From the sequence record NC_014636.1: a stretch of 64,000 nt of DNA. One strand, given 5' to 3'. Each line of letters begins with the position of its first letter. Within the stretch, counting starts at the first letter, position 1. A program made the translations under genes and the position numbers. Below are positions 4,843-32,609 of the stretch, piece after piece. The notes below the pieces were generated by a model. That model was not told the DNA's origin. It ran no database searches and saw only the letters and a program-made list of their open reading frames with translations.

Positions 4843-5061
4843 TTAGTTTGTTGAGAGTAAAGCGATAACCAGCACAAGTAATATGAGTAGGCTTTTGTTA
4901 TCGCCAAGTTTGTTTAACGTTTCCAGTATACGATTCTCTATTGCGAGTGTCAACAACTTTTTCATTATTGCTAACGGTATTACCAGAAACGTTAGTGCTA
5001 GAAACTGATATTGATTATACATCAGCCCCAGAAGATTGCAAACAATATCGTAAAAATCCAT
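4843..5061 (-). CDS. small membrane protein
   Basis: Two hydrophobic segments. Confidence 0.6.
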   Translation of the reverse strand: MDFYDIVCNLLGLMYNQYQFLALTFLVIPLAIMKKLLTLAIENRILETLNKLGDNKSLLILLVLVIALLSTN

Positions 5062-5109
5062 ATGATTACAATCGTTGACGGTCGGTGTAAAAAATCAAAC
5101 CAATCGTCC

Positions 5110-5340
5110 TTACAGACGCTCCATATATCGACTATACGCGATAGTGTAATCGGAGCCAAAACCAGTAATGTCTTCCCATCCTTGGGCGGGATCTACCAGA
5201 ATGATAAATCCATACCCCAAGAACGGAATTTCGTTGTTTGTAGCCACGCCGACAACCGACGCGGTACACTCAATCACATTTCCTTCTTTTTGGGAAACGA
5301 GTTCTACCTTGACTCGTTCCCCGCGTTTAAACGGGTACAT
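5110..5340 (-). CDS. hypothetical protein
   Basis: 76-aa ORF in operon. Confidence 0.7.
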   Translation of the reverse strand: MYPFKRGERVKVELVSQKEGNVIECTASVVGVATNNEIPFLGYGFIILVDPAQGWEDITGFGSDYTIAYSRYMERL

Positions 5341-19437: not shown

Positions 19438-19708
19438 CTTCCCATGATCGTTTTGCATTTCGACCATCACGACGAGGACGAGATTTGTCTTTCGCCGGGC
19501 GCTCGATGTGTTCCCGTTCTTCCATGACAGATTTGATCAGATCGTAATACTCAGCCAGAGTAGCAGCGCGTTCCGTGTCAGCTTGGGAGCTAGAATCATG
19601 TTCAGCGTGATATTCAGCAGCAGCCCGAGATTTCAGAACTACTTTACGCAGTGCATTCAGACGCTCGGTAGTGAGATTACGCAGTTTCTTTTCGCTAAGA
19701 ATTTCCAT
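19430..19708 (-). CDS. hypothetical basic protein
   Basis: 92-aa ORF with SD. Confidence 0.75.
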   Translation of the reverse strand: MEILSEKKLRNLTTERLNALRKVVLKSRAAAEYHAEHDSSSQADTERAATLAEYYDLIKSVMEEREHIERPAKDKSRPRRDGRNAKRSWEDD

Positions 19709-19764
19709 CTTTATTTCCTACAGGTGGTTTAACTCTATCTCTCGATAGCTTGACTTAACAAGAT

Positions 19765-19885
19765 TGGAGGGGAAGGTGGGACTCGAACCCACATACGACA
19801 GTTTGATTTCGATTTAGTTGCCGTAAAGATTCTTGACAGAATCCGCTTTTTCGACTATTGCCTATACCGATTCGGCTACTTCCCC
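19765..19885 (-). ncRNA. tRNA-scaffolded RNA B (121 nt, 3' UCCA) with insert replacing the anticodon loop
   Basis: GGGGAAG/CUUCCCC acceptor, D arm GCC-GAAUCGGUAUA-GGC, T arm GUGGG-UUCGAGU-CCCAC; insert AAAAAGCGGAUUCU-GUCA-AGAAUCUUUACGGCAAC. Confidence 0.8.
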
Positions 19886-19903
19886 AAATTTTTAACAACA
19901 CTA

Positions 19904-20021
19904 TGCTGGCGGTCTGGGATTCGAACCCAGGTTACAGGCTTAACAGGCGAGTATTTGTTGCGGAATACATTCTTATCAGAATGAATTTTACAGTGTCCTA
20001 CCACTAGACGAACCGCCAGCA
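19904..20021 (-). ncRNA. tRNA-scaffolded RNA A with the same insert motif, no CCA
   Basis: UGGCGGU/ACCGCCA acceptor extended ~13 bp, D arm, T arm CUGGG-UUCGAAU-CCCAG; insert AAAAUUCAUUCU-GAUA-AGAAUGUAUUCCGCAAC. Confidence 0.78.
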
Positions 20022-20030
20022 TAATGCTGT

Positions 20031-20159
20031 TTGTTGACGCGATGCTGGATTCGAACCAGCGACGTTTCTCGGTGTGCCCACACTATACCGGATTCGAACC
20101 GGTCCCGATACTTCTCTGCGATCAGAGGCGCTCTCCCACTGAGCTAATCGCGTCAACAA
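20031..20159 (-). ncRNA. tRNA-like RNA G with two T arms
   Basis: GACGCGA/UCGCGUC acceptor, D arm GCUC-AGUGGGA-GAGC, T arms ACCGG-UUCGAAU-CCGGU and GCUGG-UUCGAAU-CCAGC; no CCA. Confidence 0.75.
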
Positions 20160-20176
20160 AACAATCTTCTCATAGT

Positions 20177-20635
20177 TTACTTAGTTTGTAAACCTTTTTC
20201 TTTAAACTTTTTCACAGCAAGCATGAGGCTACAAATAGTTGACTGTATTTCGCCACTGTCTTTCAGAATCTTGCCGTTACCTCTGGTAATCAGAGTATAA
20301 ACGTCTTTGATATCGTTCTGCATGATCGTTTTGATCATTTCATCACTATATCGAAGTTGCATGGTAAAGTCTATCATTTCTTTACCGGAAATGAGGTCTA
20401 CCGATAGTGTCACACCATGAACATAATCAGTGTTAACAACAACACGAACGATGCCATTGCCGTCGATTGAGATCATCGGAACACCAAGCGGACGTTCGTA
20501 ATTGCGACGACACTCGGAATCTTTCTTTGCGAGATCGTCGCGACGTTTCGACTCGGCACTGACGCCAGTCAGTTTACCCTCTTCCACAATATCAGCATAG
20601 CTTTGCGGAAACAGAAACTTGATTAAAGATTTCAT
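20177..20635 (-). CDS. hypothetical early protein
   Basis: GAGG SD before MKSLIK. Confidence 0.8.
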   Translation of the reverse strand: MKSLIKFLFPQSYADIVEEGKLTGVSAESKRRDDLAKKDSECRRNYERPLGVPMISIDGNGIVRVVVNTDYVHGVTLSVDLISGKEMIDFTMQLRYSDEMIKTIMQNDIKDVYTLITRGNGKILKDSGEIQSTICSLMLAVKKFKEKGLQTK

Positions 20636-22478: not shown

Positions 22479-23912
22479 TTAGTAGTCGATACCGACGTAT
22501 CGGTCACTCATGATCTTGTCGAGCATGATTTGCAGCGGGTTGAAGTCCTTCGCACTCAGGATTGTCTCCATGATAGAAGGGCTGAAACCGGACACAAGCG
22601 CGGTACCGTTGTCATCCTTAGTCACCGGATTATTAGTCGGGCGCGGACACAGGTTCCAGAACACCAGCTTGGGCATTTCGTAACCAGCTTTGCGGTACTT
22701 CGCTTTGATCGATTCGAAGTTGGTTTGTTCACCAACACCGTAACGACGACGGCTGTAACCACCATCAGCCATGTTAAATTCCATGTCAGACAGAACAACC
22801 ATCATAGTCGGCATATCAGACTGGGGAACACGGTTGCGAACAGCGCGATCCAGAATGATATCGAATGCACCAGTGAAGTTGGTAGAACCACCCCACGGAG
22901 CACGACTCAGATGCTCGACCATCGCTTTCAGATTGTCACCTTTCTGCTTGATGTTGTAGAAGCACGGATTATCATCGAATGTAATAATCTCATTCTGGAA
23001 CACACCACGGGAACGTTCGCCGATATACAGACCCAGAGAGATCGCGATATCCATAGCAGACAGACCAGCAACAGCGGTCGGACAGCTCATGGAGCCAGAA
23101 ACGTCGACCATTGCGATCACGTTCTCAGTAGAACCAGCCATCCAGTCGCGTTGTGCTTTCCATTGTGCGTCAGCAGCAACAGAAGAACCATTACGCAGAG
23201 ACTTGATCATGTCGTACGGATATACCGCACTAGCGTTGATCTTGGCATCACCCTTTTTCAGAGATTCCAGATAAGCGACATAACGAGAGTTAGCGTTTTT
23301 CAGGAATGCTTTCTGATAACGAGCAGAAGCAACAGACGGCAGCTTACCGAAGTCGATGCCATCCCATTGACGAGCACACATCTTTTGTTCAACGGTATTC
23401 GACAGACCAACGACCAGTTGACGATACTCTTTGGCAGTCAGGCTCATTGCCTTAGCCAGAATACCAGCTTCTTTGCCCTTACGAGGTGCCCACTTTGCAG
23501 CAAGACCATTACCTTTGATCGCGATAGCGTCAACCATGATCGCAACAGCAGCCTCGCCAATCGGAGAGTCAATCATTGCTACCACGTCTTTGAAGCGACC
23601 GATTTCCGGAGTGTTCATCAAAACAACGGTCGCGTCAACTTCGTGGCGATTAGCCAGGAATTTCAGCAGACGGATGAATTGCTCACGCTCACCAGCGCCA
23701 CCGCGAATATCGCGAGCCCATTGCAGAATGCGCACAGCCCAATCCGGAGATTCGGTATAAGCTTCCTGGAACATGCTAGTCAGATCTTTCCCGCGAGAGG
23801 AACCAATCTGAGAAAACAGATTCAGACACTTATCACCGGTGGTGTAGTTAGTAACAGCACCGTTAGCAGTGCGGGCTTGAGCTTGCACCATTGCGTTCAT
23901 AAAAGCAGACAT
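22479..23912 (-). CDS. DUF2828-family TROVE/Ro60-like protein with vWA domain
   Basis: TANGA, WARDIRGGAGERE, LAAKWAPR, YDMIK, MIDAS VDVSGSM, GGSTNF, LSDMEF, KLVFWNL, ALVSGFSP. Confidence 0.88.
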   Translation of the reverse strand: MSAFMNAMVQAQARTANGAVTNYTTGDKCLNLFSQIGSSRGKDLTSMFQEAYTESPDWAVRILQWARDIRGGAGEREQFIRLLKFLANRHEVDATVVLMNTPEIGRFKDVVAMIDSPIGEAAVAIMVDAIAIKGNGLAAKWAPRKGKEAGILAKAMSLTAKEYRQLVVGLSNTVEQKMCARQWDGIDFGKLPSVASARYQKAFLKNANSRYVAYLESLKKGDAKINASAVYPYDMIKSLRNGSSVAADAQWKAQRDWMAGSTENVIAMVDVSGSMSCPTAVAGLSAMDIAISLGLYIGERSRGVFQNEIITFDDNPCFYNIKQKGDNLKAMVEHLSRAPWGGSTNFTGAFDIILDRAVRNRVPQSDMPTMMVVLSDMEFNMADGGYSRRRYGVGEQTNFESIKAKYRKAGYEMPKLVFWNLCPRPTNNPVTKDDNGTALVSGFSPSIMETILSAKDFNPLQIMLDKIMSDRYVGIDY

Positions 23913-27228: not shown

Positions 27229-27246
27229 ACAAATCTCCAAATAATT

Positions 27247-27333
27247 TAGGTGTAGTCGGGTGGGACTCGAACCCACAACCCGAACGGTTTCTGCCGTTCA
27301 GCTCTTCCAATTGAGACTTACCGATAACACCTA
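27247..27333 (-). pseudogene. degenerate tRNA-like element
   Basis: Intact T arm GUGGG-UUCGAGU-CCCAC and D-like arm; 7-bp/6-nt-loop anticodon arm, broken acceptor, no CCA. Confidence 0.55.
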
Positions 27334-30467: not shown

Positions 30468-30569
30468 CGCTAAGGATAGGAATCGAACCTATCATGAAAT
30501 CAATACCGACGGGGCAATCTATATCCCGACTTTCGAGAAGCTATCCCATTGCACTTAAAAGCATTAGCG
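30468..30569 (-). ncRNA. tRNA-like RNA (~100 nt) with T arm and expanded centre
   Basis: AUAGG-UUCGAUU-CCUAU T arm followed by CUUAGCG pairing with 5' CGCUAA; no CCA. Confidence 0.5.
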
Positions 30570-32512: not shown

Positions 32513-32609
32513 TGGTTCTCCGTACGGGATTCGAACCCGTGTACTCGCCGTGAAAGGGCGATATCCTAGCCGTGAAAGGGCGATATCCTAGCCGTTAGAT
32601 GAACGGAGA
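32513..32609 (-). tRNA. tRNA-Glu(UUC) with 22-nt internal tandem duplication
   Basis: 75-nt tRNA plus duplicated GCCGTGAAAGGGCGATATCCTA (32547-32568, 32569-32590); ACCA. Confidence 0.85.

What the first reader, a model, noticed from the sequence alone, without database searches (positions are those of the whole stretch)
20031..20159. tRNA-like RNA with two perfect T arms
After the acceptor strand, a normal D arm and a short CUCUG/CAGAG hairpin, the variable region holds a nested junction (UCGG/CCGA stem, ACCGG-UUCGAAU-CCGGU, GUGUG/CACAC) before the normal T arm. A second TPsiC-type loop could form a second elbow and act as a decoy for tRNA-targeting nucleases or modification enzymes, or as a double T-loop platform. 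It is the first of three abnormal tRNA-like RNAs in one early transcript, 2.3 kb downstream of the DUF2828 gene.
Basis: partly seen in the sequence, partly recalled or inferred. Interest (0 to 1): 0.7.

Follow-up and report, generated by a model that had tools for sequence, protein, structure and literature searches.

The report
Conserved two-T-arm tRNA-like phage RNA
This is a real, conserved tRNA-shaped RNA gene of an Aeromonas T4-like phage that has no anticodon arm but a second T arm, and it belongs to a large, apparently undescribed set of phage tRNA-like RNAs that sit beside a Ro60-like protein gene.

Summary
The window is Aeromonas phage phiAS5. It has an acceptor stem (13 bp with its flanks), a D arm, a short hairpin, a nested junction with a second perfect T arm, and the normal T arm. 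It is conserved in five phage lineages, better than the flanking genes. Compensatory changes occur in six of its seven helices. It has no 7-nt anticodon loop, so it cannot decode.

Its neighbours B and C carry a conserved module: a hairpin ending CUGAYAAG, then GCA exactly 10 nt later. A pattern holding this module plus a T loop found 78 viral-contig loci. These RNAs lie on the same strand as, and usually within 2.4 kb of, a DUF2828 gene (21 of 77 loci against 1 of 119 controls). The predicted fold of that protein matches Ro60.

A is a diverged paralogue. It keeps AAGUAUCG, but the GCA motif has been replaced by the second T arm. The best reading is a Y-RNA-like tRNA mimic belonging to this Ro60-like system. 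Neither expression nor binding could be tested. The decoy idea remains open.

The parts
20036..20153 (-). RNA A, the finding: a 118-nt tRNA-shaped RNA without an anticodon arm
   Evidence: Rfam tRNA 40.4 bits; fold; covariation; 84-92% identity in five lineages
20154..20159 (-). leader UUGUUG that pairs with the trailer and extends the acceptor stem to 13 bp
   Evidence: invariant, so pairing is possible but not proven by covariation
20031..20036 (-). discriminator C plus trailer (CAACAA) pairing with the leader; no encoded CCA
20130..20144 (-). D arm (GCUC-AGUGGGA-GAGC)
20114..20127 (-). hairpin 1, CUCUG-AUCG-CAGAG; takes the place of an anticodon arm; CUGAU resembles the start of the family module
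   Evidence: compensatory changes to CUUUG/CAAAG in PX29 and CCUC/GAGG in Aeh1; compared with tRNA-Ile and KVP40 P3
20106..20114 (-). invariant linker GAAGUAUCG; AAGUAUCG is identical to the 3' half of the module hairpin of KVP40 Pseudo-3
20069..20108 (-). nested three-way junction closed by UCGG/CCGA
   Evidence: G-C changes to A-U and G-U in relatives
20087..20103 (-). inner (second) T arm, ACCGG-UUCGAAU-CCGGU
   Evidence: 18 of 19 identical to the T arm of the window's tRNA-Leu(CAA)
20073..20083 (-). invariant GUGUGGGCACA hairpin with a GG loop; a candidate D-loop mimic for the inner T loop (inference)
   Evidence: invariant columns
20044..20060 (-). normal T arm, GCUGG-UUCGAAU-CCAGC
   Evidence: same sequence as the T arm of KVP40 Pseudo-3
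19906..20018 (-). RNA B: tRNA-shaped, with a roughly 42-nt module inserted in the 5' strand of an anticodon stem; the GC-CUGUUAA-GC arm (19948-19938) is intact
19958..19984 (-). family module in B: hairpin with CUGAUAAG, then AAGAAUGUAUUCCGCAA
19765..19885 (-). RNA C: tRNA-shaped with encoded CCA; the anticodon loop is replaced by a 52-nt insert carrying the module (CUGUCAAG 19839-19832; motif 19834-19818)
   Evidence: Rfam tRNA 46.3 bits
20664..20691 (-). perfect sigma-70-type promoter, TTGACA-16-TATAAT, upstream of the 152-aa ORF and RNAs A, B, C
20177..20635 (-). 152-aa ORF (phrog_18954, function unknown) between the promoter and RNA A
22479..23912 (-). DUF2828/DUF7788 gene: a Ro60-like protein (helical-repeat ring plus vWA domain with an intact MIDAS motif)
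   Evidence: Pfam and PHROG 850 'RNA-binding protein'; predicted fold matches Ro60
34395..34500 (-). a further motif-bearing RNA in the main tRNA cluster (AAGGAACAUUUCAGCAA, then a hairpin with a 7-nt loop, then a T arm)

Best explanation
RNA A is a functional, non-decoding, tRNA-derived structured RNA. It is a diverged paralogue of a widespread phage family of tRNA-scaffolded RNAs, to which its neighbours B and C belong. That family is genomically coupled to a Ro60-like (DUF2828) protein. What is shown: A keeps an intact tRNA 'top half' (acceptor stem, D arm with GG, T arm). Its anticodon arm is replaced by a short hairpin plus a three-way junction holding a second T arm and an invariant GG hairpin. 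The structure is under purifying selection. A lies in tandem with B and C, 2.3 kb downstream of the Ro60-like gene on the same strand, in all five lineages. What is inferred: the three RNAs are cut out of an early transcript by tRNA-processing enzymes. They then act like bacterial Y RNAs (YrlA-type tRNA mimics), as RNA partners or adaptors of the Ro60-like ring protein. The tRNA-like body would give stability and a handle for tRNA-binding or RNA-decay factors. In B, C and hundreds of relatives, the conserved module (hairpin CU-GAYA-AG, then N3-CNGCAA) would be the protein-binding site. A has lost the GCA half of that module and carries a second T-loop/GG-loop 'elbow' in its place. It may therefore bind differently, or serve as a two-elbow adaptor.
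For: Structure and selection. tRNA likeness without an anticodon loop. The family: the module pattern found 78 viral-contig loci, nearly all tRNA-shaped. The hairpin has 5 covarying pairs and 2 invariant closing pairs. KVP40 'tRNA-Pseudo-3/4/5' are members. Linkage to DUF2828: 21 of 77 module-anchored loci hold the gene against 1 of 119 control loci (Fisher p = 7e-9). All 25 RNA-gene pairs are on the same strand and 22 of 25 lie within 2.4 kb. In the reverse direction, among 79 protein-anchored loci the motif ARG-N8-CNGCA occurs 73 times on the gene's strand within 600 nt of the gene ends (46 loci), against 4 on the other strand. This holds even in loci with no tRNA genes. The protein is Ro60-like: the six top Foldseek matches in the PDB are Ro60 or Rsr (E about 1e-6, TM 0.58/0.54 over the full length). 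The best PDB sequence match is phage phiLo Ro60, and the MIDAS DxSxS residues are invariant. A is a paralogue: a covariance model built from A finds KVP40 Pseudo-3 as its best foreign hit (34 bits, E 5e-6). The two share the D arm, AAGUAUCG and the T arm. A similar double-T RNA lies 2.4 kb downstream of another DUF2828 gene (L101:8795-8906). Precedent: Ro60 partners YrlA and Yrl are tRNA-like or lie beside the gene, within 4 kb on the same strand (PMC4201824; PMC12135203).
Against: A lacks the hallmark motif, so the linkage statistics apply to B and C, not directly to A. No expression, processing or binding data could be obtained: the reads were uninformative and the complex predictor does not handle RNA. 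A second promoter-like site lies between the DUF2828 gene and the RNAs, so co-transcription with the protein gene is not implied. In KVP40 the RNAs are 9-12 kb from the gene. Double-T-loop RNAs in general are not linked to DUF2828 (1 of 119 loci). A matches Rfam YrlA only at 17 bits against a gathering score of 69, and lacks the GNCGAA motif. Many family members keep perfect anticodon arms, which a pure Y-RNA role does not explain.
Confidence: 0.42

Rival explanations
1. Free-standing tRNA decoy or sponge. With two T loops and a tRNA body, A would titrate tRNA-targeting nucleases, modification enzymes or elbow-binding factors, independently of the Ro60-like protein.
For: A has an intact tRNA top half plus a second T arm and an invariant GG hairpin. 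Family members carry anticodon loops of tRNAs that known anticodon nucleases target (GUN, UUC, UUU, UCU). These usually duplicate a normal tRNA in the same array: 13 of 24 loci with at least 12 other tRNAs, and 6 of the 7 with at least 29.
Against: A itself has no anticodon loop to be cut. Nothing in the data points to a particular enzyme. It does not explain the tandem arrangement with motif RNAs or the synteny with the Ro60-like gene.
Confidence: 0.22
2. Processing or stability element. The tRNA-like fold serves only as an RNase P/RNase Z 'punctuation' site, or as a protective end, for the early polycistronic transcript (152-aa ORF, then the RNAs, then the rI.1-like gene).
For: It lies between coding genes downstream of a strong promoter. 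Leader-trailer pairing is also seen at ordinary tRNAs of related contigs, for example L102:5067-5151.
Against: A plain tRNA-like fold would be enough for this. Here the inner junction, which such a role does not need, is invariant or covaries. Three different elaborate RNAs in tandem are more than punctuation requires.
Confidence: 0.12
3. Interrupted tRNA gene. The extra sequence is an intervening element that is removed to give a working tRNA.
For: In many family members, deleting about 41-55 nt restores a perfect 5-bp anticodon stem with a U33/A37 loop. Complete tRNAs nested in the anticodon loop of another tRNA exist in other phage contigs. The PX29 record annotates RNA C as an intron-containing tRNA-Leu.
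Against: For A, no deletion yields an anticodon arm; its only 7-nt loops are the two T loops. The motif also occurs beside DUF2828 genes outside any tRNA scaffold. No bulge-helix-bulge or ribozyme signature and no Rfam ribozyme hit was found.
Confidence: 0.06
4. Decaying tRNA fusion: a pseudogene with no function.
For: Genome papers and records call these RNAs 'pseudo-tRNA', 'tRNA-OTHER', or give inconsistent names. Parts of A resemble tRNA-Ile and tRNA-Leu of the same phage. A is found only in the Aeh1-like Aeromonas phages.
Against: A is more conserved than the flanking coding genes, has 8 pairs with compensatory changes, and has invariant single-stranded linkers.
Confidence: 0.08

Closest known systems
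Bacterial and phage Y RNAs with Ro60 (Rsr-YrlA; Thermus phage phiLo Ro60 with Yrl1/Yrl2)
   Same: A non-coding RNA of about 100-130 nt with a tRNA-like domain (D and T arms). It is encoded within a few kb of, and on the same strand as, a ring-shaped Ro60-type protein with a vWA domain. There are several different RNAs per locus (PMC4201824; PMC12135203).
   Different: The protein is a DUF2828/DUF7788 family member recognised as Ro60-like only by fold, not a Pfam TROVE protein. The RNAs have normal tRNA topology, with the ends in the acceptor stem; YrlA is permuted, with its ends in the Ro-binding stem. The conserved motif is CUGAYAAG...CNGCAA, not GNCGAA. A matches Rfam YrlA at only 17 bits. 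Binding has not been shown.
KVP40 'tRNA-Pseudo-3/4/5' and the 'pseudo' tRNAs reported for Aeh1
   Same: They are the same kind of object and partly homologous. Pseudo-3 shares the D arm, AAGUAUCG and the T arm with A, and the module and GC-CUGUUAA-GC arm with B.
   Different: They were only flagged by tRNAscan-SE as low-scoring pseudo-tRNAs; no structure, family or protein link was described. The KVP40 copies keep the module. A replaces its second half with a T arm.
Phage T4 stable RNAs species 1 and 2 (rnaC, rnaD)
   Same: Small stable RNAs of unknown function, 119-139 nt, encoded with the tRNA genes of a T4-type phage. rnaC has a T arm and an acceptor-like stem.
   Different: No D arm, no module and no second T arm were seen in the T4 sequences. 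No direct sequence comparison with A was made.
Canonical tRNA (Rfam RF00005)
   Same: Acceptor stem, D arm and T arm; scores above the Rfam gathering threshold.
   Different: No 5-bp stem with a 7-nt anticodon loop, a 56-nt insert, and no encoded CCA. It cannot decode.

Membership tests
tRNA (RF00005) | Acceptor stem, D arm and T arm in cloverleaf order; score at or above the Rfam gathering score | tested here: met
   40.4 bits against a gathering score of 29 at 20036-20153
tRNA (RF00005) | 5-bp anticodon stem with a 7-nt loop (U33, purine 37) | tested here: not met
   Hairpin 1 has a 4-nt loop (5 nt in Aeh1). The only 7-nt loops are the two UUCGAAU T loops
tRNA (RF00005) | 3' CCA end and aminoacylation | not testable with these tools
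   No CCA is encoded: discriminator C is followed by AACAAA
YrlA / Y RNA (RF02553) | Match to the family model at the gathering score; GNCGAAN0-1G motif | tested here: not met
   17.2 bits against 69, and that hit spans the junction of A and B; the motif is absent
YrlA / Y RNA (RF02553) | tRNA-like domain with D and T arms | tested here: met
YrlA / Y RNA (RF02553) | Encoded within about 4 kb of a Ro60 orthologue, on the same strand | tested here: met
   2.3 kb downstream, same strand, in all five lineages. The protein is Ro60-like by predicted fold but is not a Pfam TROVE protein
YrlA / Y RNA (RF02553) | Physically bound by the Ro60 protein | not testable with these tools
   The complex predictor returned no fold for protein plus RNA
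Module-bearing tRNA-like RNAs linked to DUF2828 (defined here) | Hairpin x5-CUGAYAAG-x5' followed by GCA exactly 10 nt after AAG | tested here: not met
   Only B and C carry it in this block. A keeps CUGAU and AAGUAUCG, but has CCGGU where the family has CNGCA
Module-bearing tRNA-like RNAs linked to DUF2828 (defined here) | tRNA body (acceptor, D, T arms) with the insert on the 5' side of the anticodon-arm position | tested here: met
Module-bearing tRNA-like RNAs linked to DUF2828 (defined here) | Detectable homology to a bona fide member | tested here: met
   The covariance model of A hits KVP40 Pseudo-3 at 34 bits, E 5e-6. Much of that score comes from generic tRNA features
tmRNA (RF00023) | Model match and a conserved tag reading frame ending in a hairpin | tested here: not met
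   13 bits against 47, for B only. No conserved reading frame upstream of the UGA of the module (my reading of the sequences)
Self-cleaving ribozymes and intron classes in Rfam | Match to any ribozyme or intron model | tested here: not met
   No such hit in the permissive scans

The most novel reading that the evidence does not exclude
DUF2828 proteins are an unrecognised Ro60-like branch found in more than 575 viral contigs. Their RNA subunits are marked by the motif CU-GAYA-AG...CNGCAA. In phages with large tRNA arrays, this motif is grafted into the anticodon stem of otherwise complete tRNAs. The anticodons of these tRNAs duplicate those of nuclease-targeted host or phage tRNAs. This would make a phage RNP for tRNA surveillance, repair or defence evasion. 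RNA A would be a lineage-specific 'two-elbow' derivative of that RNA subunit.
Probability: 0.35. Interest if true: 0.8.

Novelty: new variant of a known kind. Interest (0 to 1): 0.62.

Why it matters
Ro60/Y-RNA particles are known in animals, some bacteria and a few phages. Their RNA partners and roles in phage infection are barely understood. If the reading holds, three things follow:
- An 'unknown function' protein family (DUF2828) common in large phages gains a structural identity and a candidate RNA partner.
- The 'pseudo-tRNAs' that annotators of KVP40- and Aeh1-like phages have set aside since 2003-2006 gain an explanation.
- A compact conserved RNA motif becomes available for direct binding tests.

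The double-T-arm RNA A would show how such an RNA can be remodelled while keeping a tRNA body. If the reading fails, A is still a clear case of a conserved, non-decoding tRNA derivative.

Tried and rejected
- **tmRNA-like reading.** I tested the idea that UGA/UAA in the hairpin loop are stop codons and GCA is a resume codon. The frames upstream of UGA are not conserved and often hit a stop at once, and the tags after GCA vary from 2 aa to open-ended (sequences). Rfam tmRNA scores are only 13-15 bits.
- **Ribozyme resemblances.** CUGAYAAG resembles the hammerhead CUGAUGA, and CAGAGAAGU resembles part of the hairpin ribozyme. Essential positions differ and no Rfam ribozyme model hits, so I treated these as chance.
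- **Archaeal-type intron.** I saw no bulge-helix-bulge pairing around the insert boundaries (sequences).
- **Inner arm of A as an anticodon arm (anticodon CGA).** Dropped, because the arm matches the T arm of tRNA-Leu(CAA) at 18 of 19 positions.
- **Protein-RNA complex prediction.** The job was not folded and gives no evidence either way.
- **Expression.** No infection RNA-seq was found for phiAS5-like or KVP40-like phages. The laid 'RNA' runs are probably DNA and gave only fragments.
- **Shared neighbour protein.** The ORF upstream of A and the ORF upstream of KVP40 Pseudo-3 are unrelated.
- **Cultured relatives.** Three metagenomic family members found no match among cultured phages.
- **KVP40 genome paper.** It is not held in the library.
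- **Canonical module near DUF2828 genes.** It was found in only 2 of 80 protein-anchored loci. The link became clear only with the relaxed 3' half of the motif.

Full report
**Identity of the window.** The stretch 19700-20250 is 100% identical to Aeromonas phage phiAS5, a T4-like member of Straboviridae. It is 81-85% identical to four further lineages: avDM12, Ah1, PX29/AsFcp and Aeh1. No other cultured phage matches. An exact-pattern scan of IMG/VR with an invariant piece of the RNA found only these phages.

**The observation.** On the minus strand, Rfam's tRNA model matches 20153..20036 at 40.4 bits with a 56-nt insert. ARAGORN instead builds a 75-nt 'tRNA-Ala' from the 5' part and the inner T arm.
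- a 7-bp acceptor stem, lengthened to 13 bp by leader-trailer pairing;
- a D arm;
- the hairpin CUCUG-AUCG-CAGAG;
- a UCGG/CCGA stem enclosing ACCGG-UUCGAAU-CCGGU and a GUG/CAC hairpin;
- the T arm.

The proposed 5-bp GUGUG/CACAC helix is sterically impossible. Perfect T arms occur 31 times on this strand against 0.8 expected by chance, and two of them lie in this one RNA.

**Conservation.** On five distinct sequences, 96% of cells in the structure pair. Eight pairs changed on both sides, with at least one in every helix except the invariant GUG/CAC. No shuffle (0 of 500) reached the observed values. A is 84-92% identical between lineages. The flanking coding genes are 64-77% identical and the DUF2828 gene 83-84%. 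Single-stranded GAAGUAUCG, GUGUGGGCACA and GAGAAACGUC are invariant. So A is a selected, structured RNA and not a decaying fusion. It has no 7-nt anticodon loop and cannot decode.

**The neighbours.** Two further RNAs of about 113-118 nt follow directly.
- B (20018..19906) has an acceptor stem, D arm and T arm, and an intact GC-CUGUUAA-GC arm. About 42 nt are inserted in the 5' strand of that arm's stem.
- C (19885..19768, plus encoded CCA) has a 52-nt insert in place of the anticodon loop.

Records name these RNAs inconsistently. C is tRNA-Leu with an intron in PX29 and tRNA-Val in Aeh1. A is tRNA-OTHER in PX29 and tRNA-Ala in phiWae14. The Aeh1 genome paper lists three 'pseudo' tRNAs.

A perfect TTGACA-16-TATAAT promoter at 20691-20664 precedes a 152-aa ORF and then A, B and C. 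No terminator-like site lies between them.

**A wider family.** The DUF2828 protein led to Vibrio phage KVP40 (47% identity). Its record lists three long 'tRNA-Pseudo' genes. These, and B and C, share a module: an A-rich run, a hairpin x5-CU-GAYA-AG-x5', and GCA exactly 10 nt after AAG.

A pattern made of this module plus a T loop found 78 IMG/VR loci. My own estimate of the chance expectation was 10-15. Nearly all hits are tRNA-shaped, often with encoded CCA. In an alignment of 31 members the hairpin has five covarying pairs, with 3-14 sequences changed on both sides at each. The C-G and U-A closing pairs are invariant.

In many members, removing 41-55 nt restores a perfect anticodon stem. 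The loops then read GUA, GUC, GUU, GUG, UUC, UUU, UCC, GCC, UCU, UGA or GCU. In 13 of the 24 loci with at least 12 other tRNAs, a normal tRNA with the same anticodon is also present; this holds for 6 of the 7 with at least 29.

**Link to the protein.** In the 77 loci fetched only by the RNA pattern, 21 encode a DUF2828 homologue. All 25 RNA-gene pairs are on the same strand and 22 lie within 2.4 kb. In 119 control loci fetched by a double-T-loop pattern, which are also rich in tRNAs, only one does. Fisher's exact test gives p = 7e-9.

The reverse test used 79 loci fetched by the protein alone; more than 575 such loci exist. The relaxed motif ARG-N8-CNGCA occurs 73 times on the gene's strand within 600 nt of the gene ends, in 46 loci. 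It occurs 4 times on the opposite strand. Many of these loci have no tRNA genes at all. The full canonical module is rarer there, in 2 of 80 loci.

**What the protein is.** Pfam gives DUF2828 plus DUF7788 and a weak vWA match. PHROG 850 is labelled 'RNA-binding protein'. A model built with 13 homologues (pLDDT 77.5, pTM 0.72) has Ro60 and Rsr structures as its six best PDB matches. These have E about 1e-6 and TM 0.58/0.54 over the full length. The best PDB sequence match of the profile is the Ro60 of Thermus phage phiLo, at E 0.0024. The MIDAS residues D270, S272 and S274 are invariant.

Bacterial Ro60 partners (YrlA) are tRNA mimics encoded within 4 kb on the same strand (PMC4201824). phiLo Ro60 binds two adjacent Y-like RNAs (PMC12135203). 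A survey of jumbo phages mentions TROVE proteins with a tRNA-like partner in a few phages (PMC7824862). I found no paper that links DUF2828 to these RNAs.

**Where A fits.** A lacks the canonical module. A covariance model of A finds KVP40 Pseudo-3 as its best foreign hit, at 34 bits and E 5e-6. The two share the D arm, the octamer AAGUAUCG (the 3' half of the Pseudo-3 module hairpin) and the same T-arm sequence.

Read against the motif, A has CCGGU where the family has CNGCA. That stretch is the 5' strand of the inner T arm. The inner T arm is also 18 of 19 identical to the T arm of the phage's tRNA-Leu(CAA). The D arm and CUGAU resemble its tRNA-Ile(GAU). A second double-T RNA with a long terminal stem lies 2.4 kb downstream of a DUF2828 gene in an unrelated contig, at L101:8795-8906. 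I conclude that A is a remodelled paralogue of the family.

**Mechanism.** This part is inferred. By analogy with Ro60 and Y RNA, A, B and C are released from an early transcript and serve as RNA partners or adaptors of the Ro60-like protein. The module would be the binding site in B and C. A may bind through other features, or act as a two-elbow adaptor: the invariant GG hairpin beside the inner T loop could mimic a D-loop/T-loop contact.

The rivals are a free-standing decoy, a processing signal, an interrupted tRNA (not possible for A) and a pseudogene (disfavoured).

Neither expression nor binding could be tested here.

Noticed in passing
window 32513-32609 (-): The 97-nt 'tRNA-Glu(UUC)' called by ARAGORN holds a perfect 22-nt internal tandem duplication. 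The repeated unit is the 3' D-stem strand plus the anticodon arm, so the gene has two anticodon arms. Rfam does not call it at its gathering score.
   Followed up: partly
window 34395-34500 (-): A fourth motif-bearing RNA lies just downstream of tRNA-Asn. It has AAGGAACAUUUCAGCAA, then a hairpin with the 7-nt loop CUUCUAA, then a T arm, closed by a short UUUGUC/GACAAA stem. It has no D arm or normal acceptor stem.
   Followed up: partly
window 27240-27330 (-) and 30476-30492 (-): Two more perfect T arms lie outside any called tRNA. The first sits in a tRNA-shaped fold with an abnormal anticodon loop (CAGAAAC).
   Followed up: no
L058:4944-5011 (-) (Vibrio phage KVP40): KVP40 has a fourth module-bearing tRNA-like RNA upstream of Pseudo-5 that is not annotated in the record.
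   Followed up: partly
L183:~5000-5160 (+), L211:~4975-5135 (+): In other viral contigs, a complete tRNA with its own CCA is nested in the anticodon loop of another tRNA. Excising the inner tRNA would leave two halves of the outer one.
   Followed up: no
L104-L122, first 20-400 nt downstream of the DUF2828 gene: DUF2828 genes with no tRNA genes nearby are followed by one to three copies of the ...UACAGCAA motif. These lie in what look like larger structured RNAs of about 250 nt.
   Followed up: partly
L102:1620-1655 (+): CUGAUAAGGA overlaps the ribosome-binding site of a DUF2828 gene, which hints at possible autoregulation by the protein.
   Followed up: no
L102:5067-5151 (+); window 20019-20025 with 19899-19905: Leader-trailer pairing that extends the acceptor stem to 12-14 bp recurs at RNA B and at an otherwise ordinary tRNA in a related contig. 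It may be a processing feature of these phage tRNA arrays.
   Followed up: no
L042:1-337 (-): A phage-contig tmRNA (Rfam 52 bits, cut off by the contig end) lies about 900 nt downstream of tandem motif-bearing RNAs.
   Followed up: no
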